A DNA stretch of 64,000 bases, taken from NCBI RefSeq assembly GCF_006345805.1, contig NC_042999.1:55862001-55926000 (forward strand), given 5' to 3'. Position 1 is the first letter of the stretch, and the number at the start of each line of letters is the position of its first letter. The notes beneath the pieces are model-generated. The model saw only the letters and a program-made list of their open reading frames with translations. It did not search any database and had not been told where the DNA came from. The DNA is from Octopus sinensis. Lineage: Eukaryota. This document shows positions 3,809-62,251 of the stretch, one piece after another. The position numbers and the translations under genes are program-made.

Positions 3809-5849
3809 CATCATCATCATCATCGTTTAACGTCCGTTTTCCGCGCTAGCACGGGTTGGACGGTTCGACCGGGGTCTGGGGACCGGCACAGAAGCCAGTC
3901 AAGGCGGTGCTGGCATCGGCCACGTTCGGATGGTGCTTTTTATGTGCCACCGGCACAGAAGCCATTCGAGGCGGGGTTGGCATCAGTCCACGTTCGGATG
4001 GTGCTTTTTGTGTCCCACCGGCACAGAAGCCAGTCGAGGCTGCACTGGCAATGGCCACGTTCGGATGGTGCTTTTTATGTGTCACCGGCACAGGTATCAC
4101 AGCTACTGTTTCCATTGATATTTGGTTCGATGTTCATGTATATGCACTTGACTCGACAGATCTCCTCAAGCACAGCGAGATATTCCGGGATCCAAGGTAC
4201 TTTGGATGGGCAGGGGTATGCGGAACTGGTGCCGGAAGCATCCCGGGTCTTAGTAGTCACAGCACATCTCCAGAGATCTCGGTCCTTCGCCATTGCCTCA
4301 GTGAGGCCCAACGCTCTGAGATCATGCTTGACTACCTCATCCCATGTCTTCCTGGGTCTACCTCTCCCCCTGATTCCTTCAACTGTTCGGGAGTGACACT
4401 TCTTCACACATCTCTCCTCATCCATCCGCAGTACATGACCATACCATCGCAAGCGTCGCTCTTGCACACCGCATCTGATGCTTCTTATGCCTAGCATTTC
4501 TCTCAGGGTGCTTACACTCTGTCGTGCATTCACACTGACATTACACATCCAGCGGATCATGCTAGCTTCATTTCTTTCAAGTCTACTCATGTCCTCTGCA
4601 GTCACGGCCCATGTTTCACTGCCGTGAAGCATGGCAGTTCGCACACATGCATCATACAATCTACCTTTCACTCTGAGTGAGAGACCCTTTGTCGCCAGTA
4701 GGGGTAGGAGATTTCTAAACTTTGCCCAGGCTATTCGTATTCTAGTGGTGACACTCTCTGCGCATCCACCCTCACTACTAACTTGGTCACCCAGGTAGCG
4801 GAAACTATCAACTACTTCTAGTTTCTCCCCCTGGAGTGTGATGGAATCTGTTTTTTGAGTGTCTGTGGTGTCTATTGTCCCTGTGCATCTGCCGCACATG
4901 AAAGCTATCTTATCAGTTAATTTCCCTTTGATGTTGCTGCACCACTTATGCGTCCATAGCTTACACTGGGTGCATCTTATGGAGTTTCTACCTACACCTT
5001 TCCTACAGCTCGAGCAGGGCCACCTGCCCGATGGGGTGTGTGCTGAGTTCGCCTTTCTGCATACTATAACTTTGGTCTTCACTACATTTACTCTAAGGCC
5101 CTTAGATTCTAACCCTTGTTTCCACACCCGAAATTTCTTTTTAGTTCCGGTAGTGATTCTGCTATGAGGGCCAGGTCATCAGCATAGAGGAGCTCCCAGG
5201 GGCAACCTGTTTTGAATTCCTCTGTTATTGCCTGGAGAACTATGATGAATAAAAGGGGACTGATGGCTGAGCCCTGGTGTACACCTACTTCTACCCGGAA
5301 TTCTTCACTATATTCGTTGCCAATCCTAACCTTGCTGACAGCCTCTCTGTATAGAGCCTGTACAGCCCTTATTAGCCATTCGTCAATCAACAGTTTCCGC
5401 ATCGACCACCAGATAAGGGATCGGGGAACCCTGTCAAAGGCTTTCTCGAAGTCCACAAAAGCTATGTAGAGGGGTTTATCTTTAGCTAGGTACTTCTCCT
5501 GCAGTTGTCGGACCAGGAATATAGCATCAGTGGTGCTTCTACCTGGCACAAAACCGAACTGCATCTCATCTAAGCAAATTCTCTCCCTAATGAGATGGGT
5601 TATGACCCTCTCTGTGGTCTTCATCACCTGATCCAACAGTTTAATACCCCTGTAGTTATTTCTATCTAGAGCATCACCCTTACCCTTGTAGCAGTTGACT
5701 ATGGTGCTGCTACACCAGTCATTGGGTATGACTCCATTATGAACTACCTGGTTAACAATACGGGTGACTAGGCCATAGCCTGCATAACCAGCTGTTTTAA
5801 GCATCTCAGCAGTGATTCCTGATGGGCCGGGGGCTTTACCCGGTTTCAT
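3809..5849 (-). mobile_element. 5'-truncated RTE-clade LINE (RT, PHD-like finger, C-terminal domain, 3' UTR, (GAT)n tail)
   Basis: ORFs 5109-5849 (KAPGPSG..YRGIKLL..QFGF..AFVDFEKAFDRV..GVHQGSAISP..YADD) and 4075-5127 join via one frameshift near 5125. Tail (cat)n at 3809-3823 on +; flanked on both sides by (TA)n. Confidence 0.95.
3882..4094. repeat. 67-bp tandem repeat in the RTE 3' UTR (3 units plus partial)
   Basis: Units start at 3882, 3949, 4017 and 4084 (accggcacagaagccagtc...ggatggtgctttttatgtgcc). Confidence 0.9.
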
Positions 5850-7177: not shown

Positions 7178-8760
7178 CAGGCATACCTCACCCTACTTCA
7201 TTAACTGGTTCCAGCAGACATGACTTAAGTTGAAAAATGACTCAAGTTGAATTAACTTGTCTCTAGGCTAAGCTAAGCCAAATTTACTTGTTTCTAGGCT
7301 AAACCAATAATAACCATTCCCAGTTCTGTACGTTATTTATGAATGCATTTTCAATAATACACGGTGAATAAAAACATATTTTAGGCTTACAGACAAATAA
7401 TTTTTATTTTTTAATACAGTACAGTAAAATAAAAGTAATCTAAATTTACGAATACAATTGGTGGTGTTTACCATACATCACGGATGCTTTATTTATGAAT
7501 GCGGTTTGCAATAAGACATGGTAAAATAAAAGCCATTTTTAAGCTTAAAAAACAAATTCAGTAATTATTATTATTATTTTGCAATAGTAAAAAAACTAGA
7601 TTATTTTAAATTTACCAATACGCACATACAATTTGGTGGTTTACATCATGGATGTAGATGGCTGTGGATTGTCAACATCAACAGCTGACTCTGACTGTTC
7701 TTGTTATTTGAAGCACTTAAAAAACTGGTTGAGAGTTCCTTGATCTGTCTTCTTTTCTTCAAGGATTACATTATAAGAAGCAAAAGCTTTGTGACAAGCC
7801 CCCATAATCTTGGAAAAGGGTTGAGCATTTGGATCTATATCCTCAAACACAGAAAGAATTTTTTTGATATATACAATGGTAAAGTGATGTGGCTCAGGTT
7901 CAACTTCCTCTTCTTTATTTTGCTGTTCATGAAGCTCTATCAAGTAAATCTGTGAAATCCTCCTCCTCCAAATTTATTTCCAGTTCTTTGCTCATAGTCA
8001 CCAACGTTTTGTTGATGGCAACATTATCAAACCCCTTAGAATCATTCACAGATTGCAGGCATAGCTTTTTCCATACACCATTCATAGCTATGCTCTGTAC
8101 ATCATTCTATGCCACTGCTATGTTCTGTACAGCCTTGTAGATATCGTATCTCTTCCAAAAGCCATGAAGTGTGATGGACTCATCAAGATCAGTCGCAGCT
8201 ATTGCTTGGCACAACACACACTTCATACAGTAATGCTTGAAGATAGCAATTATTCCCTGATCCATTGGCTGCAGAAGAGACGTGGTGTTCAAAGGGAGGT
8301 ACACGACGGTAACATTGAGGTCAAAATCTACAGTGTTTTGAGGGTGGCCAGAGGCATTATCTAAGATAAGTAAAACCTTAAAAGGAATCCCCTTCTCCTT
8401 ACAGTACTTCTCTGATGCTGGGATAAAATGATTGAAGAACCACTCTTCAAAAACAACGACAGTAACCCATGCTTTTGAATTAGCCATCCATATAACAGGG
8501 AGAGATGCCTTGGGTATGTTCTTCAGGGCATGGGGGTTATGTGCATGATACACAAGCAATGGCTTTAACTGAAAATCTCCTGCACAATTACCTCCCAACA
8601 TAATGGTCACACATTCTTTTGAGACCCTGTAGCCTGGAATAGTTTTCTCCTCCTTGGAAATGAATGAACGGTCTGGCAGTTTTTTCCAATACAATCCAGT
8701 TTCGTCTATGTTAAAAATCTGTTTCCAAGCAAGATATTATCTTACCATAGTCAGATATGT
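7178..8760 (-). mobile_element. Tigger/pogo DNA transposon, 5'-truncated, degenerate DDE transposase
   Basis: ORF 8107-8694 (YWKKLPDRSFISKEEK..KPLLVYH..NSKAWVT..LILDNASGHP..LLQPMDQGII) plus C-terminal pieces to ~7700; Tigger-like terminus TA|caggcatacctc at 7176-7189. Confidence 0.9.
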
Positions 8761-20835: not shown

Positions 20836-20960
20836 ATTCCGTCAAAAGTTAGCAGAGCTCCTACAAAGCAATAAGGTGCAGTACACAATTATATTTTTTG
20901 TGATCATTGATGGTCTTATAGTCATTCTTGAACTGCTAATTGACTTGGACATCATTAAAC
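20836..20960 (+). CDS. HVCN1: voltage-gated proton channel exon: S0-S1 (FRQKLAELLQSNKVQYTIIFFVIIDGLIVILELLIDLDIIK)
   Basis: tgtag acceptor and gtaagt donor; phase 2 to phase 1; matches human Hv1 VVLDALLVLAELILDLKII; Asp (D112-equivalent) codon at 20909-20911. Confidence 0.92.
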
Positions 20961-21589
20961 GTAAGTAGAAATAATTTAGTCCTTTAATTGATTTTTACAA
21001 CCTGAGAAGATCGTGTTCAAGAACTGTATATATTCCACCACATACAACTGTAACATATTCATCATCATCATCACCATCACCATCATCATCACCATCACCA
21101 TCATCATCACCATCACCATCATCATCATCATCGTCATCGTCATCGTCATCATCATCATCAACATCATCATCATCGTCGTCGTCATCGTCGTCGTCTTCAT
21201 CATCATCATCATCATCATCATCAATATCATCATTTTAGTCTCCACTTTTCCATGCTTGCATGGATTGGATGGAATTTGATAAGGTGGATATTCTACAGAC
21301 AAATGCTCTTCCTGTTGCTGTCACATGTTTCCAAGTAAAGTAACATTTCCCTATGACCAGACATACCTCGGAAGATTGGAACTGACAGACACTGCTTGCA
21401 TTATAATGACACATTTACAGCTATCATGACATGTCAGGGCAAGGAAACAGTAATATACACACACACACACACAAACACCATACATGCACACACGCACACG
21501 CACATGCATACATAAACATACATATATACATGCACACACACACACATACATGTGGAAGTTCCAGAATAATAGATTATTAAACCCTATTC

Positions 21590-22254
21590 TGGTATTGAGT
21601 ACTTCTTTTTATGGATGAGGAGATCTGTGTAAAGAAGTGCCACTCCCAAACAGTGGAAGGAATCCGGAGTAGAGGGAGACCCAGGAAGATATAGAATGAG
21701 GTGGTGAAGCTTGACCTTTGAACGTTGGGCCTCACAGACGCAATGACAAAGGACCAAGACCTCTGGAGATATGCTGTGACTGTGAAGGCCCGGCAAATAA
21801 AGTGAGTTCACAGCTGTAACCTACACAATTGTTGCATAACCAGTCCACTCAAAAGTACCTTGGATCATAGGGGGACGTGCTGTGCTTGAGGAGACCTATT
21901 GAGTCAAGTACATCAAAGCCAAAATCAAATGGAAATTGTAGTTGTGATCCCCATGCCAGTGGCACGTAAAAAGCATCATCTAAATGTGGTCAATGCCAGC
22001 GCCACCTTAACTGGCTTCCATGCCAGTGGCACATAAAAAGCACCTACCAATTGTGGTCGTTGCCAGCCCCCTCAGCCCCTGTGCTGGTGGCATGTAAAAA
22101 GCACCCACTACACTCTCGGGGTGGTTGGCATTAGGAAGGGCATCCAGCTGTAGAAACACTGCCAGATCAGACTGGAGCCTGGTGCAGCCCCTTGGCTTCC
22201 CAGACCCCAGTAAAACCGTCCAACCCATGCCACCATGGAAAACGGACATTAAAC

Positions 22255-22290
<36 letters not shown>
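21590..22290 (+). mobile_element. RTE 3' fragment with (GAT)n tail
   Basis: Encodes degenerate CVKKCHSQTVEGIRSRGRPRK..KDQDLWRYAV, followed by the 3' UTR and an aaacgatgatgat tail. Confidence 0.85.
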
Positions 22291-22633
22291 TATTAAACAA
22301 ACAATATCATTATTTTTGTTTTCATTCATAGGCAACATTTTACATGTATGGATTAATTCTTCACCTGCATTTCTCAAAAGTATTTCAAACATTTGTTCCA
22401 TTTATGCACACCACAATGCTTCAAGCAAATGGCAACTCTCTTTTACTTATATATATATTTCTAGTATGCAACTGATTATAGGCATATCTCTCTGAATCAC
22501 AATCTTATAAACTTATACACACCATTCTAGAATTCCATTCTCATATCTTAGTTTTGCCAATTCTACTTTGTCCTATTCTGTTTCTATTCTCTATTATTAT
22601 TGTCATCATCATCATCATCATCATCATTATTAC

Positions 22634-23573: not shown

Positions 23574-25022
23574 GTGAGAACATATGGCCTAATGGTTAGA
23601 GCATTGTAGTCATGATCACGAGATTGTGTTTTCAGTTCCTAGACTGAGTGGTGTGTTGTGTTCTTGAGCAAAACACTTCATCTTGCGATCTCTTCAATGC
23701 CTGATGCATGGTACACTGTGCACCCGTTCAGGCTACACTGATTTGATGGGGGGAGTGAGGTAATGTACAACACATATATTCAATCACTATAAACAAATCA
23801 TTTGTGCAGGTTATTTGGCAAAAAGGCTCAATATTTATTCATACGTTGTCTTCAACAGGAAAATCCATCATTATTATTATTAACAGTGTTTTGGGGGGTT
23901 TTTTCTGTAAATAACTGTTTAAAACTTTGGCTCAGGGCCAGCAATTTTGAAAGGAGAGAAGCAAATCAATTACATTGACTTCAGTATTCAACTGGCATAT
24001 TTTATTGATCTTGAAAGGATGAAAGGCAAAGTCAGCCTCAGTACTTGAACTCTGAATGCAAAGCCAGAAAAAATGCAGCCAAGCACCCTGTCTGGTACCT
24101 CTCTTACCTCTCAAACCTAGCATAAGCCACCTCCCTCAATACTACGCCCCACTCTATCACAGTGTCTAGTCTTACAAGCTGCTTGGCAACCTGAATAGTG
24201 TTGGTGACATGAAAAAGCATCTAGTACACTTTGTAGAGTAGTTGATGTTAGGATGGGCATCCAGCTATAGAAACCATGCCAAAACTGACATTGGAACTTG
24301 AAACAGGCTTCTGACCTGTCAGGTTCTGTCAAATCATCAAACCCATACCAACATGGAATACAAATGTTCAATAATGGTAAGGATGATGATGACAGTAATG
24401 ATGGTGGTGGTGGTGGTGGTGTGGGAGTGATGGCAGCGGTAGTGGTGGTGATTATTCTTTGGAGAATTTTCATTTGTTAATTAAAATATCTCTTCCCAGT
24501 ATTTATTGCTCCATAATAAATTACTCTGGTAATGTTACATAATACTGGAAAAGTATTGCCAAAATGTAAATGCTGAAAATTTTGTTCATAAGCTCTAACA
24601 TGTGTTCTGGTTGGATCTGATATCTCTATTAATGGCATATGGATTCTATCCTGTATGGAATCTGAAAGTGGTGAGCTGGAAGAATAGTTAGTATATTGAA
24701 CAAAAAGCTTAGTTGCATTTCTTCTGGCTCTTTACATTGTGGGTTCAAATCCTGCTGAGGTCAACTTTGCCTTTCATCCCTTCAGTTGATAAAATAAAGT
24801 ACCAGTCAAGTATATGGGTCAATGTAAACAACTTGCTCCATCCATTAAAAACTGCTAACCTTGTGTCTAAAGTAGAATGAATAATTAATGGATGCTGTTA
24901 TGTAGGAATCTAATGCTGATATAACATATTAGAAACAGTTCAATTAACAACAAATATAATTGCATTTTGTTTTAATTTTAATTTACTTTATATTTGATAT
25001 TTTCTGTCTTTAATAGTTTCAG

Positions 25023-25429
25023 ATAAGCCACATGGTCATGTAGAATCCCATGAAGTGGAATCACATGGGAGTCCCCATGACTCTCAAGACTCAACTACTC
25101 TCCTCTCTATATTATCCAACGAAGATGATTTCAATGAAGACCACCAAGTGGTGTATCACAGAGGACATCATAATCCAGCTCTGGTGAAAACACATGGCCG
25201 ACATCATAACTATCACGATGAACATTCTATGGTCACTCAAGCTATTACAACTTTGAGTCATATCTTGCTAAATAGTACGAGTGACTATGAAGGGGATGAC
25301 AACAACAGCATCTCTCATGGAGAGGATCATGGTCATGGAGGAGGGCACCATGGCCATTCCGACAAAGAAATTGCAGAACATACCCTCCATTATGCTAGCC
25401 TTGCTATCCTGTGTATCTTTCTTGTTGAG
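25023..25429 (+). CDS. HVCN1: Hv exon: ~116-aa His-rich S1-S2 loop plus S2 (..IAEHTLHYASLAILCIFLVE)
   Basis: Acceptor tttcag at 25021-22 (alternative in-frame tag at 25015-16); donor gtaagc at 25430; phase 1 to phase 0; the end matches human VFHYMSITILVFFMME. Confidence 0.9.
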
Positions 25430-26518: not shown

Positions 26519-26572
26519 GTCATATGTAAAGTTATAGCTGAAGGAACTCACCTATTGAAGCATAAAGCTGAA
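26519..26572 (+). CDS. HVCN1: Hv exon: S2 end and S2-S3 linker (VICKVIAEGTHLLKHKAE)
   Basis: ttttag acceptor, gtatgt donor, 54 bp, phase 0 to 0; same length as human IIFKLFVFRLEFFHHKFE. Confidence 0.9.
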
Positions 26573-27301: not shown

Positions 27302-27640
27302 GTATATACAGCCATCAAGAATACATAAATCAGAAAAATATGCACTCATACATTTGTCAATAGGGTAAGTATATTAGCTGAAGTGTACAATATTATATAT
27401 CCAGTATGGCTGATCTTACCAATCATCTCCATAGTGGGGGTTCAATGGAATGTAACTTTATGCTCTTCAGAGTTCACAGTTATGGAAGAAAACATGGTGT
27501 TTTCTTCCATATCTGTCAGCTCTAAAGAGCACAGGGTTACACAATCAGGCTATTATCTAAGCATTCTGTTGAACGCCCACTGTGAAACCGATTGATAAGA
27601 TCAGTCGAATGGATATACAATACTGTACACTTCAATTAAT

Positions 27641-27893
27641 CATCATCATCGTCATCATCATCATCATCATCATTTAACGTCCGTTTTCCATGCTAGCATG
27701 GGTTGGACAGTTCGACTGAGGTCTGGGAAGCCAGGAGGCTGCACCAGGCTCCAGTCTGATCTGGCAGTGTTTCTACAGCTGGATGCCCTTCCTAACGCCA
27801 ACCACTCTGTGAGTGTAGTGGGTGCTTTTTAAGTGCCACCGGCACAGGTGCCAGAGGAGGCTGACAACGGCCACAATCGGTTGGTGCTTTTTA
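27641..27893 (-). mobile_element. RTE 3' fragment
   Basis: (cat)n-ttaacgtccgttttccatgctagc..ggatgcccttcctaacgccaacc..; ends at an (AT)/(ACAT)n tract. Confidence 0.85.
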
Positions 27894-29123: not shown

Positions 29124-30000
29124 CAAGGTGCAATAGGTAAATTATCACCATTTTTTATATTTTTAATTTTGCGCATGCACATTGTTTGTTTATGACTTTG
29201 CCAACCACACAGTACAGTAGGGTCAGCTGGGCACCATCTGTGAGAAAAACAGCACCATGACGCAATTCACTTTGCCAGAAATTTGGAAACATCATGCTGT
29301 ACTGCTTGGCATTCGTGCTGGAAGCTCCAATACAAACATTTCAGAGTGTTTAGATGTCAATCTGAGGACAGTGCAATCAGAGGACATGTACTGAGAGTGA
29401 TAAAAATCAAACATCCGGTCAACACCATGGTGTTTGAAGTGATCACTAGTGATGGTAATGTTATGCCCCCATTCATCTTCCCATACAGCCTCAAATTCAT
29501 CACAGAGGCCCACATCAAGTGCCTGGAGGAGGTAGTGCTGCTGTGTGTCTATAGGGTGGCTGCTGGAAGACCCTATGTCTGGCAACAGGACTTAGCACCA
29601 TGCCACACAAGCAGGAGAACCCAAATTATGGTTGTCAAACAAGTTTTGCAACCACATCATCCCTAACATCTGGCCACCTTTCTCCTCAGAATGCAACACC
29701 CTTGATTATTATGTGTGGGGTACAGTTGAGTGAGAGACCAACAAAACTTCTTGTGATACCAAAGATGAATTGAAGGCAAGGATTATGGTAGTGTTCACCA
29801 ATTTAAACAAGGAAACCATCCAGAAGAGTTGCAGGAGATTCTGAAGTCATCTGGAGGCCATAGTTGATGTCAGTGGCGATTTTATCAAATAGATTTACTC
29901 TTTAATATTCCAAGAAAATTTTATGTAATTTCGGTAAATATATCTGTTGAGACGTCAGTGCTTTCATTTTTTGCCCAATTTAGATGACAGTTTATTCACC
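29124..30000 (+). mobile_element. internally deleted Tc1/mariner transposon, maT-like (DD37D)
   Basis: Follows a TA. Encodes HAVLLGIRAG.. (HTH), then jumps to MVFEVITSDGNVMPPFIF..WQQDLAPCHTS..IWPP..CNTLDYYVWG. There are 37 residues between the last two Asp after correcting one frameshift near 29625. Confidence 0.8.
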
Positions 30001-30001
30001 A

Positions 30002-30343
30002 CATCATCATCATCATCATCATCGTTTAACGTCCGTTCTCCATGCTAGCATGGGTTGGACGGTTCGACCGGGGATCTGGGAAGCCAGAAGGCTGCACCAG
30101 GCTCCAGTCTTATCTGGCAGTGTTTCTACAGCTGGATGCCCTTCCTAACGCCAACCACTCCGTGAGTGTAGTGGGTGCTTTTTACGTGCCACCTGCACAG
30201 GTGCCAGGCGAGGCTGGCAACGGCCACGGTCGGATTGGTGTATTTTATGTGCCACCGGTACGGAAGCCAGATGAGGCGGTGCTGGCATCGGCCACGAGTC
30301 GGATGGTGCTTTTTACGTACCACCAGACCAGGGATCCTGGGAT

Positions 30344-35185: not shown

Positions 35186-35324
35186 GTACTTGATGCCATC
35201 GTTGTTGTTGTGTCTTTTACACTGGATATTGTCTTCTCCTTTGTTGATGTTGCCCAAGCAGCCAAAGACGCCGCTGGTTTGATGGTTATGTTAAGATTAT
35301 GGCGCATCACTCGAATTATCAATG
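35186..35324 (+). CDS. HVCN1: Hv exon: S3-S4 ([47 protein letters not shown])
   Basis: cttcag acceptor, gtatgt donor, phase 0 to 1; carries the RxWRxxR Hv signature plus D174 and D185 equivalents. Confidence 0.97.
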
Positions 35325-39988: not shown

Positions 39989-40104
39989 GTGTGATCATTT
40001 CAGTACAAATGGAAGCAGAAAAGAAAATTAATAAAGTAGAAAAATTATTACATGCTGCCGAGAACGAGAATGAGTATTTACGAGAAGAAATTGCCAAATT
40101 AAAG
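39989..40104 (+). CDS. HVCN1: Hv exon: post-S4 and coiled coil (GVIISVQMEAEKKINKVEKLLHAAENENEYLREEIAKLK)
   Basis: tcacag acceptor, gtaagg donor, phase 1 to 0; matches human NGIIISV followed by a heptad-like helix. Confidence 0.93.
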
Positions 40105-41300
40105 GTAAGGAAATGTGATTAATATAGAAATATATTTAATAATGAATTATATTGGATGAGCAGAATCTGTAGAGCATCAGATAAAATCATCCTCATCATT
40201 ATCATCATCATCATTGTTTAATGTCTGCCTTCCATGCTACATGGGTTAGACAGTTTGACAGGAGGTGACCTGGCAGGAGCCTGCACCAGACTTCTGCGTC
40301 TGTTTTGGCAGGATTTTTATGGCTGGATGCCCTTCCTTACACCAACCACTCTATAGAATGGACTGAGTGCTTTTTACTTGGCACTAGCACAGTTTGACAT
40401 GGTGTTTTACAGCTGGATGCCCTTCCAAACATCAAACACTTTACAGTTGTGGACTGGATGCTTTTTAAGTGGAACCAGCACCGGCAGGGTCACCAAGTAA
40501 CTTGCAAGACAAGGATCCTTTGCAAGGGGAGGAGGCATTGGAGGAGGGGATTTGTCAGATGATGAAAGGTTATAGTGAGACAGAGAGACAGAAACAGATG
40601 TCTTGCTGTAGAGGAGGTATATGGTTACTTGGCCAGAAAGAGAGAGAGAGAGAGAGAATAGGAGAGAGAGAGAGAATAGGAGAGAGAGAGAATAGGAGAG
40701 AGAGAGAAGGAAGAAGAAGAGAGAGAGAGAGAGGGAGAGAGAGGGCAAATGAAAGGAAGTAATTTATATCAGATGAACTGCAGAAGACAATAAATATCTA
40801 AGAAACTGGAAAAAAATGTTGTAAATAACAACAACAACAACAACAATAATAATAATATTCTGCTCAAAACCACAGATTTGCAAGCCAGTTGTTTGACCTT
40901 AACCAGCTGAGCATGTCTCTTGGTGGCTGGCAATATATGCATCTCTGATCATGAGCAGAAGTAGTGGACGAGCATCATAGCCATGTGTTGGGAAGAATCC
41001 TTTGGGGTTTGAATAATTCGCTTCCAGAAATATGGGTGTTTCATTCATCATCCTTAAACAAATCTTATTCAGAGACCTTTTGAGTAGGATGCGCCACTGA
41101 ACCTGAGAAAATTCTAACTAGGCCCCACCAGCAAGATCATGTGCTGTTTATCTTGATATGAGTTCACCATGTTGAATATGTATGGTTGTGATGCATGTGC
41201 CCTGTGTACTCGTATCAGATGGGTAGTCATGATGGGTGTGGTAGGCTTCATATATTTGTACTCTAGTGTCACTTTTATAGCATACACTGCTCTCTCACTC

Positions 41301-51538: not shown

Positions 51539-51629
51539 GAAGAATTAGAATCGGTTCGGAAAAAGCAGAAAAAGGACGATGGCAAATCACTTGAAAGTGT
51601 ATCCCAAAAGACGGATGATGATTTAATGG
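51539..51629 (+). CDS. HVCN1: Hv exon: coiled-coil end and C-tail (EELESVRKKQKKDDGKSLESVSQKTDDDLM)
   Basis: ctaacag acceptor, gtaagt donor, phase 0 to 1; continues the heptad pattern; unique sequence between repeats. Confidence 0.75.
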
Positions 51630-51820
51630 GTAAGTTTCAATATAAACTATATTTTTTTTCCGAGTATATATTATCTTTTCAGAATTCGACTAAGCTCCTT
51701 AAAACTGTTGATAGCAGAATCTATCTAAATTCATAGATGAGAATGACATGTATAGTGATGTCAATTAAGTGACACCCTATTATTTAATAAGTATGAGTGA
51801 AAGAGGGTCACCATCTTGTA

Positions 51821-54800
51821 TGTAATGACAAGAAAAGAATTTGTGAGACGGTTGTAATAAGTCATAACATGTTTATTACCGGAGGTAATGCGTTAACATA
51901 AAAGGTTAATTGAAGGAAAACTTGTAACATCAAATGATCATATTCTTTTGCAACCACATGTCTCCAAGCAAATGAGGCGAACATACGCGTGTGCAGGTGT
52001 GTATGTGAGTGAACCGACTCAATGCATATCGAAGAATCAACAGGCAACGAATGGCGCAAATTTAGAAATATGTTCCTTAATATAAGGGATGAACCGGAAG
52101 TCCCTGACTTCGACGTCAACTGAAAACTTCCAGAATGTTCGAGGGAGATTACTCTCGTTAAATCCCCTTTTTCCTTTTGCTTTCCTGCTTGACCGCCAGG
52201 ATTCACTACATAACCCCCTCCTCAGACGAGCAGTCGATAAGCAAAATCATTGTAGTGATCCAGGGCAGCTACAAAGCAAAACAAGTAGTAAAATAGAAAA
52301 CATCAATACATGCATCACGATAGATACTGTTTGGTGCAGTAAACCTTTAGCTACACAGCTATGCACATCAAACTAAATGCAAAACAAAGCAAAATGAAAA
52401 TACAATGTGAAACATGCATGGGGAAAATGTTTGTGAATAAACGTTCTTTGTAAAAGAAATAGCAAACAGCTTGTTTTATAATACAAAGCTAAATATACAT
52501 AGTTCTGGATAATTCTTGTGGCCAATGTACTGTTCTGCCACTTTTTGCGATATAAGGTTTATAGGTATGTTGTGTTTGAGGTGCATGTGGTGTTGTTGAA
52601 GTAAGAACGAAATCTGTTGACGTATGATGGTGTATCAGAATCTGGTGCATCAACTGGTTTGAACATTTGACCGGGAAGTGTCAAAGTGATGCCGTGAAGA
52701 AGTTCGGCTGAGGAGAAACCTAAATTTGTCTTAACAGCGGAATGGCAACGAAGAACAATTGGTAGGAATTCTGTCCAACGTTGCAGATCAGGAGTATGTG
52801 TAATGCAGCTTTTAACTGTCTGTGGAATCGTTCTATCATTCCTTTGGAAGTTGGGTGATAACTTGTCGTATGAATTCGAGGAGCACCCAACAGTCATGAT
52901 ATTTCACGGAATAAAGAAGCTTCGAACTGGTGTCCCCTATCAGTGGCTATTTTAGATGGGACACCAAAGCACGCTACCCAATTGGAAATGAACGCTTGTG
53001 GGATGGATTCGGCTGTGATATCAACGTCAATCAGAGGTATGGCTCCAGGCCATCAAGAGAAACGATCGATGCAAGTCAAGATGTATGTGAAACCATGACT
53101 AACGGGCCAGGGTCCAACAATGTTGATGTGGACATAACAGAAACAAGCGTCCAGTGGGCTGAATTTTCCGAGAGGAGCACGAATATGTCGATGGACTTTG
53201 TTGCGTTGAAACTGCAAAGAAGAATGTGTCCTACTGGCGATTATATGGTGCATGTTAGGCCAGAAGAAACAGGCTGTAGTGAGCTTTACTGTGACGGCTA
53301 TGCCGGGATGCGACAAGGAATGAAGAGCATCGAAAACGGTATGCTGATGACGATGTGGAACAAGCGGTATAGGTGAGCCGGTAGAGGTGTCACAAATGAT
53401 CCGCCCTTCAGCAGATGGAATGGGTAAGTATTCAAATCTGCAACAGGAATGTGGTTGGAAGAAGTGTCCAAAGAGTCCAAAGGAGGTTGGTCTCTGGCGA
53501 TAGCAACCAAATCGATGTGTGCAGGAGACAAAAGTGAACACACAGGAAATCTGGATAATGTATCAGTAGGTATGTTTGTAGATCTGGCTATATGACGAAT
53601 GTCACTGGTATATTGCGAGATGAAATTCAAGAGTCTGTATGTCCTTGATGAGTATTTATCGGACTTGGATTGAAGAGTGAATGTAAGAGGTTTATGATCT
53701 GTGAATACCATGAACTCCTGGCCTTCTAGGAGATGGCGGAAGAGTCTCACAGCAAGATAAAATGCTAAGAGCTCTCTGTCAAAAGTATTGTAACGCTGTT
53801 CTGCTGGCTTGAGTTGACATGAGAAAAAGGCAAGTGGTTGAGATTTCTGGTTGATGATCTGTTCTAGAATGGCGCCAACAGTGATCGTAGACGTGTCTAC
53901 AGTTAAGGATAGTTTCACGTTTGCAGTAGGATGAGTAAGAAAGGAAACTTTAGCTAATTCAGACTTTACGGAGTCGAAAGTTTGCAAGGCGTCAACCAAA
54001 AGGGAAATAGATGCGTCTTTCTTCTTTGTGGATTTCAAAAGTTGTGTCAGGGGGAACAACTTGTCCGCGCTGTTTGGGATGAAAGTTCTGTAAAAATTTA
54101 TTAACCCCAAAAAGTGACGTACTTGTCTCAATGAAGTAGGGGATGCGATTTTCTGAATAGCATCCACTTTAGATGGGAGGAGTCGAATTCCCTCTGTGTC
54201 TATAAGATGTCCAAAGAATTCCAATGAAGTTGTACCGAATACACATTTAGCTGGATTGATCTTTACATGATACACTCACAGACGTTGAAACAACTGAGGT
54301 AGATGTTGATGATGATGTTCATCTGTGTCGCTGGCTACTAGGAGGTCATCTACATAAGCAAAAACAAAATTCAGTCCGCGTACAACTTCGTCGATGAAAT
54401 ACTGGATTGTACTGGCAATATTTCTCAGACCAAAAGGCATAGATAGGAATTCGAATGAACCAATGGTTACGGCAGTTTTAGGTATATTTTCTGGGTACAT
54501 CTGGATTTGGTGGTACGCACGTACCAGATCCACTTTGGAAAATATAGTGCAACCATGGAAGTACATAAGAGAAGTCCTTTAAGTTGGGTAGGGAAATGTC
54601 CTGTAATCACCAACGGTCTAAAATACGCTCTACCCTTCTGAGCTAAGTGTAGCGGAGATGCCCATGAGCTAGTAGAAGGACGTATAAGGCCAGGCTTGAA
54701 CATGTGATCGAATTCAGCGCAAACTTTCTTGAGTCTGTCTGGCGCTAGTCTACGTGGACGAGAGAAAATGGGTGGACCAGTTATTGTAATAAAATGTTGA

Positions 54801-56060
54801 GTCGAGTGGACTGTCTGGGTAGGCTTAAATGATAGATCCGTTAACTCGGGAAATGAAGCAAGCAGAGTATGGAACTGGTTATTGGCAGCAACTACAAAAA
54901 AATGATGGGACGAGGATAGCAGTGGTAGATTCACATGCAGACGTAGATAAAGATGTGATAGTATCCACAAGTTTCTGTTTCCTGACATCTACCAGGAGTG
55001 AATAGCGGTATAAGAAGTCCACCCCAAGGATAAGATGCGGCAGGTCAGTGATGACAAAAATCCATTTAAAATCTCGACGCAAAGCAAGGTCTAGAATTAA
55101 ATATATCTGACTATAGATTTTGACGGGAGACTGGTTCACTGCATATAAGGAAATACTGGATAACTGTGGCTTGTTAGAGCTGAACCGTAATGGCAAATAC
55201 TGCAACTTGATCCTGTATCGATCATGAATGACCTGTTTGAGACTAGGTCCCTAATGAAGAAAGCCCGATTAGCTGAAAAATTGTGAGAGTTCTGACGTGC
55301 CCGGGCTCTCTAGGTTCAGTTTTCCAACACTTTAAAAGCACAAGACTTGTTACAACGACGTGCCTTATCATGAAAACGTGCGTGGTACCAGCACACCGAA
55401 GAATTGTTGGCTGAAAAAGTGTTATGTGGTTTAGAAGGGAAAGAATGGCTTCGCGAACGCTGTCTAACATGACAGAATTGAGCTATTTAGCATGTTAAAC
55501 CATCGATAGCCTTCAACATGGCGTCTCCATTTTTATTATCAGGCTGTTGTCAAGAAGACGATGAACCAATAACCGAATCAGCTGCGGTGGGTCAGTGAGA
55601 AAATTCCATTATCCTGTCTACAGATGAAGCAATTTGATCTATAGTGTTGGTGTCAACCATATTCGCCAATATCGTCGGTACATTAGTTGATAAGCGGGAA
55701 AAAATAATTTCTTTACGAAGAAGCTGTCCGCAGGTGTATGGCCACTGGGTTCTCTGATACGCCTAAGAAATTCTGAAGGAGTTTTGTCACCCAGGTTCTC
55801 ATCTCGTAACAATGCACGGAAATGACTTTCTGCTGATTTAGAATTTCTGCATAGTATTCCTGTTCTCAGGTCATGCTTTGTGGAAGATCTGTGATGATAT
55901 ATTTAACGGTGTCTGCTAATATGGCAGGAATGCCACTAATAAGCAGGTGTAGCTTTTGTTGAGCTGCTTGTATACCATGTGCTGTGAAATACGAATCAAG
56001 CTGTGCAAACCATAGCTTGGCATCGCTGTAGTAAAAATGCTATGAAAGTTTTGAGTGTTG
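51821..56060 (-). mobile_element. degenerate Ty3/Gypsy LTR retrotransposon lacking the 5' LTR (gag-PR-RT-RNaseH-INT, PPT, 3' LTR 51821-52210)
   Basis: gag FYYSDAKLWFAQLDSYF (~56040); protease region 54879-55205; [22 protein letters not shown] (54276-54566); RNase H TSTITVGAIL..DRELLA..FTDHKPL; integrase HPG..GPWP..LTCIDRFS. PPT gaggagggggtta at 52223-52211; LTR ends TGTAGTGA/TCATTACA. Confidence 0.93.
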
Positions 56061-56744
56061 GAGCTAAAGCAATACTGGATCCCAAGACATCCCAAATTTT
56101 AACTGAGTGACAAAAAAGGAACTTTTGAATATCTTAAAAGTTATATTCTTCAACAAATTTAAATTTAAGATTGATGTGTCCATATACAATCTTGTAGGCT
56201 TTGAGAAAGTCTGCTTTAATTCCATAACATTCCAGGGTATGTACCCTGATTTAACTGCATCAAATAATCAAAATAGATGAAATTCCTGTAATTTATTTCA
56301 GGAATTCTACAGATAAATTATCTTTAGATAAATTCTAGGTATTTCTCTTTCTAAAATAAAGAGACCAAACTTGAAAGGCATATTTCAATATGAAAATATA
56401 TTATTTTAAAATTATGAGAATGCCAAGCCTCATCTTTCTGAGTGAAATTAAGTAGGCAGAACTGTGTTGAAACTTATCAGATAAATTGTGTCTGTAATTT
56501 AGAAGCCCAACCTTGTCATGCTACTATGTCACACTGATCCTGCTGGAAATTTATGTTAAGAGTATGAGTGTCTGCGGAGTACTCAGTCATGTACACTATT
56601 ATTCAATGAAAAAATAGTTTGTTTGATTAAACAACTTTAATATTCATTGGCGGTGGTGGTGGTGATGATGATGATGATGATGATGATAACACAAGAACAA
56701 TGATATTACTGGATTTAATAACTTTTTCTACAATTTTATTTTAG

Positions 56745-56792
56745 ATATTCTTATGGGCTGGGACAGCCCACACTTCTTAAACAGCAATTCTG
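56745..56792 (+). CDS. probable Hv C-terminal exon (DILMGWDSPHFLNSNS)
   Basis: ttttag acceptor, gtatgt donor, 48 bp, phase 1 to 1, open and compatible with the previous exon; no homology support. Confidence 0.5.
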
Positions 56793-59700: not shown

Positions 59701-59830
59701 TCAGCAGCTACCTGAAGTAATGAGAATAGTTTGTTTTTACTGTTAATGTCAATAACTTGTTTGTTATTTATTGTTTGATTTGGTGGGTGGTGTTGGTTAA
59801 ATATCAATGTTTTCTTTGCTCTTCTTACAG

Positions 59831-60000
59831 ATTCTATACATTGCCTTAGTACCTTAGTTCATTCTAAACACCTTCTATATAATGTATCTACGTATTCTAC
59901 ACATTATGTCAACATCTTTACACTGTGCCTATGTATTCTACACAGTGTCAATACCTTCCATACACTGTCCCAACACCTTCAATATACTGTATCTACATAG
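59831..60000 (+). CDS. possible terminal Hv exon running into a degenerate ~20-bp minisatellite
   Basis: Long pyrimidine tract plus ttacag; phase 1 frame open to TAG at 59998-60000; low complexity and no homology. Confidence 0.25.
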
Positions 60001-61259
60001 TCTATGCACCAAATCAACATCTTCTACACCTTGTGTCAACACCCTCTATACATTGTGTAAGTTCATTCTACACACCTATTCAATACATTCTGTATACATT
60101 TCTTAATGTTTGTACCACTTACATATACAGTGTTATATTACATGCGACCTGCCTGGTGTCTATTTTCAGTTAATTCTAATATCTGTTCTCAGGTGATTTG
60201 GTACCTATTCTGGATCATTTTGTCCCTATTCTCAACTGATTTAGTATTCCACTGATCTGTTACTTATTCTCCTAAAAGTTAAGTGAAATAAAGTTTACTG
60301 GCAGGAAACATGATATTATGCTAACAGCAGATTTTAACTCATGATCTATGAGTAGATAGTCTATTGGTCATCCCACCATTTCTATTTATATAAAGCTCAA
60401 GTCTAGACAAATATTGTTATCAGTGTTAATTACTATAAAATGTGAGTGAAATATTAAAACAGCCTTTGATTTATCTTCAGTGCAACTGTGGTCACTATAC
60501 ATTTAAAAAATGGCTCTCTGTCGGTTATGACAATGTGCTCAAGTTGATTCAATCAACAGAATAGCCTACTCATGAAATTAACATGCAAGTAGCTGAACTC
60601 ACATTTTACTCTGATTACATTTTACACTAATTATCATGTGGCTGAGTGTTTAGGGTATTAAGTTCATGATTGTAAGGTCATGTGTTCAATTTCCAGCGAC
60701 ATATTGTTTCCTTGAGCAAGACACTTTATTTCACGTTGCTCCAGTGCATTCAGCTGGCAAAAATGAGTATTTCAAAGGGCCAGCATTGTCACAAATTGTG
60801 TCATGCTGAATCACCCTGAGAATTACATTAAGAGTACACAAAGCATCACACTTCCCCATTTTATGTCCTAAAATCAACTGACTCCACTGTTAAATCCATC
60901 ATGCCAACTTGTCCTTGATGTAACATATGAAAATTAATATTTCACTGAAGTCCTGATGAGTATAGCTATAACACATCATTAAAACTACACTTGAGTGGAT
61001 TATAACCAACCATTGTAATATATTATTCCTCAATATTTTAGGAAAAACAGTTCTTACTCCTTCAACAGCTACAAGTAAGTACTCTTTTACTTGTTCCTTC
61101 TTTGGCTTTTTCACAATTTACTTCACAATATTAATCTACAATGATATTAATTTCCAAAGTAATCCTGAAAGTTTGAACTCACAGTCAGTTACTATGAATA
61201 AATGAGCTTTTTTCCTCTTTGAGCTCCCACCAGTATTCACCTATCCACTCCCCTACACT

Positions 61260-61540
61260 ACGTGCTATCTCCCCAATGTAAGAAACAAGGCAACAACTTA
61301 CGCTGGGGAGATGGCATGTAACATAGGGGAACAGATAGGTGAACACTGGTGGGAGTTCAAAGAGGAGAAAAGCTCATCAATGTTCTACCAACGTGCTCAA
61401 TTAGAACATAGAGGCTCAGTTAATAACAGGAATGCTAAGTTATTATCAATGCATAGAACAAACATGACACTTAGACAGATTACAGAGGCCACAAACGTAG
61501 TAATAGACATAGCAAGCTTCAAAAGAAAACACGAATGAAA
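61260..61540 (+). mobile_element. degenerate Penelope-like GIY-YIG fragment
   Basis: YTC..TTYAGEMACNIGEQIGEH..MFYQRAQLEH..KLLSMHR..LRQITEA..FKRKHE resembles YIGET.R..ER..EH..H..KIL..R.I.EA. Confidence 0.5.
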
Positions 61541-62251
61541 CAATAACACCCACCACACAACACAACATGATGACTAAAGATAGAATGGGAAAGAAAAAGG
61601 ACACAGATACAAACAGTATAGTGAGCAAATCCATATACACACATACAAAACACAGACATGTGTGCACATACACACACACAGATACAAATGCAAATGCATG
61701 GACAGATAAGGATACACACCCTAGAAAAACAGAATAGACTAAACAGAATAGACTAAACAGAACAGGAAGAGACACATGGGATGGAGAGTTGCTGAAGAGG
61801 TCACAGGTGGGTGACAAAAGATTTCCAGGCAAAAGATAAAAAATAATAACAATAATAAACAAATGGAGAACCATGTGTTTTTTTGGCAAAAAAAAAAAGA
61901 TGACCATCCCCAAAATAATAACTTTCATCTTGTTTTCATTCTTCCTGAGGCTTTAATAACTACTATTTAAAAAATGGTTCATATTTCTATTACTTTCTCT
62001 ATGTTTGAATCTCAAGAGGGATTTAATAAGTACCAGTGATATACTAGGGTAGATTAAACCAATTGTTCAAACACTGTTTTTGTGCTCATTTCAGAAATCC
62101 AGATTTTTTTTTCTGAAGTGCATCTAACAATATGAAAAACATCTTTATTTCAGCAACAACATTGTCATCACCAACAACACGTGAGTATAATCCCACATTG
62201 CAGCCCTCGTCTCAACATGTAAGTTGTTACTTTCTTCATCACACTTTAACC

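What the first reader, a model, noticed from the sequence alone, without database searches (positions are those of the whole stretch)
25023..25429. Proton channel with a ~116-aa extracellular S1-S2 loop containing 22 histidines
Seen: between S1 (..DLDIIK) and S2 (IAEHTLHY..) the spliced protein has about 116 residues with 22 His in HG/HH/HGH clusters, many Asp/Glu and two N-x-S/T sequons (NST, NNS). Known: the human Hv1 linker is about 5 aa here, and external Zn2+ inhibition of mammalian Hv1 depends on H140 and H193. The H140 equivalent is kept (LHY), but no His occurs in the S3-S4 loop ([10 protein letters not shown]). Long S1-S2 loops are reported in some algal and dinoflagellate Hv channels, so novelty must be checked. 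Inference: the loop may be a polyhistidine Zn/Cu-binding or external pH-buffering module resembling ZIP/ZnT His-rich loops, plausible in an animal with copper-based haemocyanin.
Basis: partly seen in the sequence, partly recalled or inferred. Interest (0 to 1): 0.8.

Follow-up and report, generated by a model that had tools for sequence, protein, structure and literature searches.

The report
Octopus HV2 proton channel histidine loop
This exon encodes a long, histidine-rich outer loop in the octopus copy of a mollusc-wide voltage-gated proton channel (HV2); the loop is real and conserved, but it was already described for the sea-hare channel AcHV2 in 2022, so this is a new member of a known kind whose loop function is still untested.

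Summary
On the + strand, one exon (25017/25023-25429) sits between an S1 exon (20836-20960) and an S2-S3 exon (26519-26572). It encodes 116-118 residues with 21-22 His, 20 Asp/Glu and two N-x-S/T sequons, then the first half of S2.

The spliced window exons are identical to an annotated Octopus vulgaris protein (P0214, 665 aa). O. bimaculoides and Argonauta hians have orthologues, and every annotated isoform keeps the whole loop.

With the loop removed, the protein groups with 20+ long-loop proteins from chitons, gastropods and bivalves. That group includes the 339-aa Aplysia protein that matches published AcHV2 (79-residue loop, 14 His, inward H+ current, Zn2+-sensitive). All 23 orthologues have loops of 64-134 aa with 14-23 % His, net acidic charge and 2-6 sequons. 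They also share a conserved motif next to S2, HHH-[ST]-N-K-E-x-A-E-H-x-L-H.

So this is the cephalopod HV2 orthologue, and the His-rich loop is the family hallmark, not a novelty.

One correction: all annotated octopod models use an acceptor 6 nt upstream (25017), which gives 118 aa and 21 His.

The loop's function remains inferred. I favour an external H+/Zn2+-binding module, possibly also a tuner of the gating voltage.

The parts
20836..20960 (+). HV2 exon encoding the end of the N-terminus and S1 (FRQKLAELLQSNKVQYTIIFFVIIDGLIVILELLIDLDIIK plus 1 base). It contains the selectivity-filter Asp (IIDGL) and the outer-S1 acidic residues E and D (LELLIDLD).
   Evidence: 100 % identical to P0214 residues 33-73; aligned to human Hv1 residues
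25017..25429 (+). Exon encoding the whole S1-S2 loop and the first half of S2. The start is 25017 according to all annotated octopod proteins (..K-LSD-KPHGH).
   Evidence: annotated orthologues
25017..25369 (+). His-rich extracellular S1-S2 loop proper: 118 aa, 21 His, 20 D/E. The calculated net charge is about -15.5 at pH 8.1, 0 at pH 6.0 and +7 at pH 5.
   Evidence: AlphaFold2 pLDDT <50 over most of it
25220..25270 (+). Only predicted secondary-structure element inside the loop: an amphipathic helix EHSMVTQAITTLSHILL. It is nearly identical in Argonauta and is followed directly by the NST sequon.
   Evidence: (helix 143-159 of P0205, pLDDT about 60)
25271..25279 (+). N-S-T glycosylation sequon
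   Evidence: conserved in O. bimaculoides and Argonauta
25301..25309 (+). N-N-S glycosylation sequon (N-H-S in the other octopods)
25346..25390 (+). Conserved motif next to S2, HHGH-SDKE-IAEH-TLH. The family consensus is HHH-[ST]-N-K-E-x-A-E-H-x-L-H. It ends at the His equivalent to human H140.
   Evidence: (position-by-position counts in 23 orthologues)
26519..26572 (+). Exon encoding the end of S2 and the S2-S3 linker (VICKVIAEGTHLLKHKAE)
35186..35324 (+). Exon encoding S3, the His-free S3-S4 loop ([10 protein letters not shown]) and S4 with RLWRITR (RxWRxxR)
39989..40104 (+). Exon encoding the S4-proximal coiled coil (GVIISVQMEAEKKINKVEKLLHAAENENEYLREEIAKLK)
   Evidence: continuous helix in the AF2 model
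51539..51629 (+). Exon at the start of the C-terminal tail (EELESVRKKQKKDDGKSLESVSQKTDDDLM)
56745..56792 (+). Alternative micro-exon (DILMGWDSPHFLNSNS), present only in O. bimaculoides isoform X1 and the Argonauta model
61042..61074 (+). Alternative micro-exon (GKTVLTPSTAT)
62154..62180 (+). Small C-tail exon ((A/T)TTLSSPTT). The rest of the roughly 300-aa tail lies beyond the window end, and the first coding exon lies upstream of the window.

Best explanation
Identity (about 0.95). The feature is the S1-S2 loop exon of the octopus orthologue of the molluscan type-2 voltage-gated proton channel, HV2, whose characterised member is Aplysia AcHV2. A long, mostly disordered, N-glycosylated, acidic loop with 14-23 % His is the defining trait of this subfamily across Mollusca.

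Mechanism (inferred, about 0.4). The loop acts as an external binding module for H+ and divalent metals. I see two parts.
- Membrane-proximal part. This part is conserved in sequence (HHGH-SDKE-IAEH-TLH). It runs into the S2 helix and places E(-7), E(-4)/H(-3) and H(0) on one helical face, beside the outer-S1 Glu and Asp. I propose that it completes the external Zn2+/H+ site that Hv1 builds from H140 + H193 + E119 + D123. It would stand in for the S3-S4 His that all HV2 proteins lack.
- Distal part. This part is conserved only in composition. It is a titratable polyelectrolyte, about -15 at sea-water pH and neutral near pH 6. It would hold protons or metal ions at the channel mouth and may help set the negative activation range that lets HV2 carry inward H+ current.

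Shown here: gene structure, orthology, conserved composition, conserved motif and predicted disorder. Inferred: metal or proton binding and any effect on gating.
For: Identity and expression of the loop:
- The spliced window exons are 100 % identical to O. vulgaris P0214 over 314 consecutive residues.
- O. bimaculoides isoforms X1-X3 and the Argonauta model keep the full loop. The O. bimaculoides isoforms differ only in the C tail.

Orthology:
- In a tree built without the loop, the octopods sit inside the clade of all long-loop molluscan proteins. That clade includes the 339-aa Aplysia protein P0208. Core identity is 61-74 % within the clade against 47-53 % to short-loop HV1-type proteins.
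- P0208 matches the published AcHV2 description: 339 aa, 79-residue loop, 14 His in pairs (one search gives 78 aa and 15 His with my boundaries).

Family signature:
- All 23 orthologues have loops of 64-134 aa, 14-23 % His, net charge -4 to -17 with His neutral and 2-6 sequons. The rest of each protein has about 2 % His in most (up to 6.4 %).
- Motif next to S2: H(-13) in 21/23, H(-11) in 18/23, K(-8) in 22/23, E(-4) in 21/23, H(-3) in 21/23, H(0) in 23/23.
- 17 of 21 loop His are kept between Octopus and Argonauta, while overall loop identity is 65 %.

Structure: the AF2 transmembrane core has pLDDT 75-86 and the loop is below 50 except for one helix.

Literature:
- AcHV2 is proton-selective, Zn2+-sensitive, opens about 25 mV more negative than AcHV1 and carries inward current (PMC10911540; PMC10377628).
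- In EhHV1, which has ten His in the S1-S2 region, single His mutations abolish Zn2+ sensitivity (PMC7754295).
- Swapping the S1-S2 loop between fungal Hv channels shifts the G-V curve by about -30 mV (PMC7910559).
Against: - No experiment has addressed the loop in any HV2 channel.
- AcHV1 (short loop) and AcHV2 have the same pHo dependence of gating, about 44 mV per pH unit. This argues that titration of the loop His does not strongly drive gating.
- In NpHV1 the single H140-equivalent His accounts for nearly all Zn2+ inhibition. Extra loop His may therefore be dispensable for Zn2+ block.
- At marine ionic strength, electrostatic effects of a floppy loop are heavily screened (my own reasoning).
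- The preference for keeping His over other residues among octopods is only a trend (Fisher P = 0.075).
- The equation P0208 = AcHV2 rests on species, length and loop description. I did not compare accessions.
Confidence: 0.85

Rival explanations
1. Proton-collecting antenna or local buffer. The His and carboxylate groups gather and hand protons to the outer vestibule. This would let an inward-conducting channel work in alkaline, poorly buffered sea water or haemolymph.
For: - HV2 is the molluscan type that conducts inward H+ current, and it is strongly expressed in Aplysia gut and gill.
- The composition (about 18 % His plus excess D/E) is conserved while the sequence is not.
- The calculated charge swings from -15.5 at pH 8.1 to 0 at pH 6.0.
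- His/carboxylate antennae are established in other proton-transfer proteins (general knowledge).
Against: - Hv unitary currents are very small, and classical work found them not to be limited by buffer supply at millimolar buffer (from memory, not checked here).
- Nothing in the sequence tells an antenna apart from a metal site.
Confidence: 0.25
2. Gating-offset tuner. The loop acts sterically or electrostatically on S1, S4 or the dimer interface. It would shift activation about 25 mV negative, turning an extruder into a depolarising inward channel. The His residues would be secondary.
For: - AcHV2 differs from AcHV1 in offset (-20 versus +5 mV) but not in slope.
- Fungal S1-S2 loop swaps move the G-V curve by -29 to -35 mV and speed opening.
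- The loop is strongly acidic at physiological pH. External negative charge shifts activation negative (surface-charge theory).
Against: - It does not explain why His content in particular is held at 14-23 % in every lineage.
- The equal pHo slopes of AcHV1 and AcHV2 argue against a large charge effect from the titratable loop.
- The core also differs by about 50 % between HV1 and HV2 types, so the offset may arise there.
Confidence: 0.2
3. Tolerated low-complexity spacer. The loop would be a glycosylated, disordered insert with no role specific to His. Its composition would reflect mutational bias such as CAT/CAC microsatellite expansion.
For: - The loop is predicted disordered. Its length varies two-fold and the sequence is barely alignable between classes.
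- CAT/CAC-type microsatellites occur in the adjoining intron at 21059-21233.
Against: - No tandem repeat lies within the exon.
- The His fraction stays within 14-23 % in 23 species of four classes, while the rest of each protein has about 2 % in most (up to 6.4 %).
- The motif next to S2 is conserved in sequence.
- 81 % of the His are kept between Octopus and Argonauta.
- AcHV3's even longer loop has only 13 His in 299 aa.
Confidence: 0.08
4. Gene-model artefact. Most of the loop would be intronic and removed through an internal acceptor, so the mature protein would have a short linker.
For: No transcript data could be examined here. One ambiguity does exist at the 5' end of the exon, where two acceptors lie 6 nt apart.
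Against: - The frame is open for 135 codons and both other frames are closed.
- Annotated models in three octopod species all keep the loop.
- Every gastropod, bivalve and chiton orthologue has an equivalent loop.
- AcHV2 with its loop was cloned and expressed.
Confidence: 0.02

Closest known systems
Aplysia californica AcHV2 (Chaves et al., FEBS J 2022/2023, PMC10911540); most probably protein P0208, LOC101850633, 339 aa
   Same: - Same orthologous clade when the loop is excluded; 65 % core identity.
- Asp selectivity filter, RxWRxxR in S4, His at the outer end of S2 and no His in the S3-S4 loop.
- Long His-rich, sequon-bearing S1-S2 loop that ends in HHH-T-N-K-E-x-A-E-H-x-L-H.
   Different: - The octopus loop is longer: 118 aa with 21 His against 79 aa with 14 His.
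- It is more acidic (net -16 against -6) and has fewer sequons (2 against 5).
- Its His sit mainly in HG/GH contexts, not HH pairs.
- The octopus protein is about 660 aa because of a Ser/Thr/Pro-rich C tail of about 340 aa with alternative micro-exons.
- Octopus has His at the position of human H168 (KHK), where Aplysia has Gln (by eye).
- The currents of the octopus channel have not been measured.
Aplysia AcHV3 and the molluscan HV3 family
   Same: [quoted passage not shown]
   Different: - HV3 has an xPWRxxR S4 motif (first Arg lost, Pro before Trp), weak voltage dependence and a leak current.
- Its loop has only about 4 % His.
- The window protein has RLWRITR.
Coccolithophore EhHV1 (Emiliania huxleyi)
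   Same: It has ten His in the S1-S2 region. Two of them are individually required for Zn2+ sensitivity (cited in PMC7754295).
   Different: It belongs to an unrelated protist lineage, with an RxWRxxRxxH-type S4 in protists. The His-rich region is not homologous to the HV2 loop. I did not examine the EhHV1 sequence here.
Human and mouse Hv1 (HVCN1; PDB 5OQK, 3WKV)
   Same: - Same four-helix voltage-sensor fold with no pore domain.
- D112, E119, D123 and H140 equivalents, RxWRxxR and a C-terminal coiled coil.
   Different: - The human S1-S2 linker leaves only about 6 unaligned residues, against about 121 in octopus.
- The second Zn2+ ligand, H193 in the S3-S4 loop, is absent from octopus and from all HV2 proteins.
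Fungal Hv channels AoHv1 and SlHv1 (PMC7910559)
   Same: The S1-S2 loop is the dominant determinant of the voltage range and speed of activation. AoHv1 also opens with an inward H+ gradient.
   Different: The loops are short and not His-rich, and they are not homologous to the HV2 loop.
His-rich loops of ZIP/ZnT metal transporters
   Same: Disordered poly-His/acidic composition; known or proposed metal binding (general knowledge).
   Different: The resemblance is compositional only. The loop has no Pfam match. Those loops are usually cytosolic, whereas this one is extracellular and carries sequons.

Membership tests
Voltage-gated proton channel (HV/HVCN1) | Four-helix voltage-sensor domain with no S5-S6 pore domain | tested here: met
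   Pfam Ion_trans matches only the S2-S4 part. The PDB best hits are human and mouse Hv1. AF2 gives S1-S4 plus one long C-terminal helix.
Voltage-gated proton channel (HV/HVCN1) | Asp selectivity filter in mid-S1 (human D112) | tested here: met
   FVIIDGLIV aligns with human VVLDALLV. The column is Asp in all 29 aligned sequences (D57).
Voltage-gated proton channel (HV/HVCN1) | S4 signature RxWRxxR | tested here: met
   RLWRITR at 35186-35324. R268, W270, R271 and R274 are invariant.
Voltage-gated proton channel (HV/HVCN1) | C-terminal coiled coil directly after S4 | tested here: met
   Exon 39989-40104. AF2 shows a continuous helix from residue 256 to 320.
Voltage-gated proton channel (HV/HVCN1) | Proton-selective, voltage-gated and delta-pH-gated current | not testable with these tools
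   This needs patch clamp of the octopus protein. It has been shown for the Aplysia orthologue only.
Molluscan HV2 (AcHV2 type) | Groups with AcHV2, not with HV1-type paralogues, when the loop is excluded | tested here: met
   NJ tree and core identities: 61-74 % to the long-loop clade including Aplysia P0208, 47-53 % to short-loop types. Caveat: P0208 is equated with AcHV2 by species, length and loop description, not by accession.
Molluscan HV2 (AcHV2 type) | Long extracellular S1-S2 loop rich in His | tested here: met
   118 aa with 21 His. The family range is 64-134 aa and 14-23 % His.
Molluscan HV2 (AcHV2 type) | His at the external end of S2 (H140 equivalent) with conventional RxWRxxR | tested here: met
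Molluscan HV2 (AcHV2 type) | Activation negative to E_H with inward H+ current; Zn2+ sensitivity | not testable with these tools
   Electrophysiology is required.
Molluscan HV3 (AcHV3 type) | S4 motif xPWRxxR (first Arg lost, Pro before Trp) | tested here: not met
   The window has R-L-W-R-I-T-R.
Bivalve HV4 (CgHV4 type) | Minimal channel with RxWRxxK | tested here: not met
   The third charge is Arg, and the protein is about 660 aa. HV4 features are taken from PMC10377628.
ZIP/ZnT-type His-rich metal-binding loop | Sequence homology to the transporter family | tested here: not met
   The 120-aa loop has no Pfam family at E <= 1. The resemblance is compositional only.
ZIP/ZnT-type His-rich metal-binding loop | Measured binding of Zn2+/Cu2+ | not testable with these tools
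   This needs ITC, ICP-MS or a similar assay on the isolated loop.

The most novel reading that the evidence does not exclude
The HV2 His/acid-rich loop may not be a mere Zn2+ site. It could be the element that turns a proton extruder into a depolarising, inward-conducting proton channel. It would do so either by harvesting protons from alkaline, weakly buffered sea water or haemolymph (a proton antenna) or by setting the shift of about -25 mV in activation threshold. Octopods, with the longest and most acidic version, would show the effect most strongly.
Probability: 0.25. Interest if true: 0.55.

Novelty: new member of a known kind. Interest (0 to 1): 0.25.

Why it matters
HV2 is one of the few proton channels that opens negative to the proton equilibrium potential. 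It can therefore acidify and depolarise cells. Why it does so is not known, and its signature His-rich loop has never been tested.

The comparison made here adds two points beyond the Aplysia paper:
- The loop's composition (14-23 % His, net acidic, glycosylation sequons) is held constant from chitons to octopods.
- The 14 residues leading into S2 form a conserved His/Glu motif.

These give precise targets for mutagenesis. For the genome scan itself, the lesson is that this feature is an already annotated, already described family trait.

Tried and rejected
A profile of database homologues was used instead.
- The look-up of encoding contigs for the O. bimaculoides protein found no record. I therefore had no orthologous DNA, could not compute dN/dS and could not compare the tandem acceptor in another species.
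- The first coding exon (MHSEGK...PEKT) was sought by tblastn and by regular expressions and is not in the window.
- Most of the C tail likewise lies beyond 64000.
- The supplement of PMC10911540, with the octopus sequences and accessions, is not held.
- I considered and rejected an origin of the loop as a microsatellite. There is no tandem repeat in the exon and the trait is pan-molluscan.
- I rejected HV3 and HV4 membership because the S4 motif does not fit.
- I considered an extra transmembrane or re-entrant segment in the loop. The only helix is amphipathic and of low confidence, and it is followed by a sequon.
- No squid, cuttlefish or Nautilus orthologue appeared in either large search. 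Conservation within cephalopods is therefore shown for Octopoda only.

Full report
**1. What is in the sequence**

The window is AT-rich (30-47 % GC in 2-kb blocks, mostly 33-39 %) and full of microsatellites. It reads as an animal genome.

On the + strand, 25023-25429 is an open frame of 135 codons. It lies between an AG acceptor and a GTAAGC donor. The neighbouring exons are:
- Upstream, 20836-20960 encodes FRQKLAELLQSNKVQYTIIFFVIIDGLIVILELLIDLDIIK and ends with one extra base.
- Downstream, 26519-26572 encodes VICKVIAEGTHLLKHKAE.
- Further downstream, 35186-35324 encodes S3, [10 protein letters not shown] and S4 with RLWRITR.

It has 22 His, 20 Asp/Glu, 5 Lys/Arg and two sequons, NST and NNS. 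The rest of the assembled protein has 4 His in 159 residues. The chance of at least 21 His in 118 residues at a 2.3 % background is 4e-13. No tandem repeat lies inside the exon.

**2. Whose gene it is**

A profile search of the representative library and a second word-indexed search found three annotated octopod proteins:
- Octopus vulgaris P0214, 665 aa. NCBI calls it a hypothetical predicted protein and UniRef calls it voltage-gated hydrogen channel 1.
- O. bimaculoides LOC106880339 isoforms X1-X3, of 683, 667 and 656 aa.
- Argonauta hians P0213, 677 aa.

The spliced window exons are identical to P0214 over 314 consecutive residues starting at residue 33. The window is therefore O. vulgaris or something indistinguishable from it.

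I located these exons: 20836-20960, 25017-25429, 26519-26572, 35186-35324, 39989-40104, 51539-51629, 56745-56792, 61042-61074 and 62154-80. The first coding exon and most of the C tail lie outside the window.

**3. A small correction to the exon start**

All three species' annotated proteins read DLDIIK-LSD-KP. In the window this corresponds to the acceptor tag|TTTCAG at 25016|25017. The loop is then 118 aa with 21 His. Both acceptors may be used, but I could not examine transcripts.

**4. Is the loop really expressed?**

The three O. bimaculoides isoforms differ only in C-tail micro-exons, and all keep the entire loop. The O. vulgaris and Argonauta models keep it too. Every orthologue in other molluscan classes also has an equivalent loop (section 5). 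AcHV2 was cloned with its loop and gave currents. Wholesale skipping of the loop is thus very unlikely.

**5. The family**

The first homology search already showed full-length coverage to molluscan proteins named voltage-gated hydrogen channel 1-like, from Haliotis, scallops, Pomacea, Biomphalaria and Lymnaea.

I removed the loop and built a neighbour-joining tree of S1 plus S2-S4. The octopods fall inside one clade with all long-loop proteins from a chiton, vetigastropods, caenogastropods, heterobranchs and scallops. Short-loop molluscan HV1-type proteins, Lingula and vertebrate Hv1 fall outside. Core identity is 61-74 % within the clade and 47-53 % outside it.

The clade contains Aplysia californica LOC101850633 (P0208, 339 aa). 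Chaves et al. (PMC10911540) describe AcHV2 as 339 aa, with a 79-residue S1-S2 loop holding 14 His organised in pairs, RxWRxxR and a His at the outer end of S2. P0208 fits this description.

The same paper states that octopus and oyster have genes similar to AcHV1-3. The 2023 review counts four putative HV genes in O. bimaculoides. The window gene is not HV3 (xPWRxxR) and not HV4 (RxWRxxK).

**6. What is conserved in the loop**

Composition across 23 orthologues:
- Loop length is 64-134 aa.
- His content is 14-23 %, against about 2 % in the rest of each protein in most (up to 6.4 %).
- Net charge is -4 to -17 with His neutral, and +4 to +17 with His protonated.
- There are 2-6 N-x-S/T sequons.
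- Short-loop relatives have linkers of 12-15 aa.

The distal loop is barely alignable between classes. The last residues before S2 are conserved in sequence: H(-13) in 21/23, H(-12) in 17/23, H(-11) in 18/23, [TSP](-10), N(-9) in 19/23, K(-8) in 22/23, E(-7) in 19/23, E(-4) in 21/23, H(-3) in 21/23, L(-1) in 23/23 and H(0) in 23/23. H(0) is the human H140 equivalent. In octopus this stretch is HHGH-SDKE-IAEH-TLH, at 25346-25390.

Identity between O. vulgaris and Argonauta by region:

| Region | Identity |
|---|---|
| Loop | 65 % |
| S2-S4 plus coiled coil | 93 % |
| C tail | 57 % |

Of the 21 loop His, 17 are retained. The excess over non-His residues is only a trend (Fisher P = 0.075).

**7. 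Structure**

I ran AlphaFold2 on the 321-aa O. bimaculoides model with a 29-sequence alignment:
- The transmembrane core is moderately confident, with pLDDT 75-86.
- There is one long S4-coiled-coil helix.
- pLDDT is below 50 for residues 77-140 and 160-188 of the loop.
- The single loop helix, HSMVTQAITTLSQILLN, has pLDDT of about 60. It is followed immediately by the NST sequon.

This agrees with the published remark that molecular dynamics of the AcHV2 loop showed no defined tertiary structure. S2 is predicted to start at about position -9. This places E(-7), E(-4)/H(-3) and H(0) at i, i+3/4 and i+7 spacing on one helical face. That last point is my reading.

The human Hv1 structure sequence aligns to the octopus protein in two blocks. 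Six residues separate the blocks in human and about 121 in octopus.

**8. How it probably works**

Shown by others:
- AcHV2 is proton-selective and Zn2+-sensitive. It has the usual slope of about 44 mV per pHo unit. It opens about 25 mV more negative than AcHV1 and so carries inward current. It is strongly expressed in gut and gill.
- The H140-equivalent His dominates Zn2+ inhibition in an insect channel. In EhHV1, with ten His in the S1-S2 region, two single His are essential.
- In fungal channels the S1-S2 loop sets the voltage range, with shifts of about -30 mV on swapping.

Inferred here:
- HV2 lacks the S3-S4 His that supplies the second Zn2+ ligand in mammals. The conserved His/Glu ladder at the top of S2, next to the outer-S1 Glu and Asp, is the best candidate to complete an external Zn2+/H+ site.
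- The distal loop has a calculated charge of -15.5 at pH 8.1, 0 at pH 6.0 and +7 at pH 5. It would serve as a titratable reservoir for protons or metal ions, and perhaps as a tuner of the activation range.

I put about 0.95 on the identity and about 0.4 on this mechanism. The antenna, offset-tuner and inert-spacer readings are listed as rivals. The identical pHo slopes of AcHV1 and AcHV2 count against a strong electrostatic role for His titration.

**9. Novelty and verdict**

The gene is annotated, and the family and its His-rich loop are published. The literature library holds no follow-up on the loop.

What is new here is modest:
- The octopod version is the longest and most acidic among the non-caenogastropod members.
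- The compositional signature is pan-molluscan.
- The motif next to S2 is defined.
- Octopod proteins carry a long, alternatively spliced C tail.

I class this as a new member of a known kind, with interest 0.25.

Noticed in passing
window 25010-25027: Two in-frame acceptors lie 6 nt apart (tag|TTTCAG|ATAAG). The upstream one gives K-LSD-KP, as in all annotated octopod proteins. They may be alternative acceptors.
   Followed up: partly
window 40105-40125: Reading through the donor after ...EEIAKLK gives VRKCD and a stop. The old 321-aa O. bimaculoides model XP_014785706.1 ends in the same way (...KLKVRKYE). This is either a short isoform without the C tail or an old mis-prediction.
   Followed up: partly
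window 51539-62180 and beyond 64000: Octopod HV2 proteins have a Ser/Thr/Pro-rich C-terminal tail of about 340 aa. It is absent from AcHV2 and most other orthologues. Caenogastropods (Babylonia, Nucella) also have long tails. Two cassette micro-exons (56745-56792 and 61042-61074) generate isoforms X1-X3 in O. bimaculoides.
   Followed up: partly
window 21059-21233: The S1-loop intron holds a (TCA)n microsatellite rich in CAT/CAC. In one frame it would read as poly-His. It is intronic and not part of the loop exon, which contains no tandem repeat.
   Followed up: yes
window 53298-54275 (-), 5109-5849 (-), 8107-8694 (-): Mobile-element remnants are present. One is an RT_RNaseH fragment (1e-24) inside an HV2 intron. 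Upstream of the located exons lie an RVT_1 reverse-transcriptase fragment (4e-23) and a DDE_1 transposase fragment (2e-36).
   Followed up: partly
window 22075-22291 and 27635-27851; also about 40200-40500 and 29984-30148: Copies of a SINE-like repeat of about 215 nt flank the loop exon in inverted orientation, 91 % complementary. Similar sequence recurs in other introns.
   Followed up: no
window 26550-26560 (KHK in THLLKHKAE): Octopus has His at the position aligned with human H168, the internal pH-sensing residue. The Aplysia orthologue has Gln there (KQK). I noted this by eye.
   Followed up: no
protein searches: No squid, cuttlefish or Nautilus orthologue of HV2 turned up. The only cephalopod hits were Octopus (two species) and Argonauta. 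The gene may be absent from those lineages or simply not annotated.
   Followed up: no
P0008 (Arion vulgaris) residues about 335-360: This land-slug orthologue has a second His-rich stretch (HGHHHHHHVHAGKHLKDGHGHKK) in its cytoplasmic C tail.
   Followed up: no
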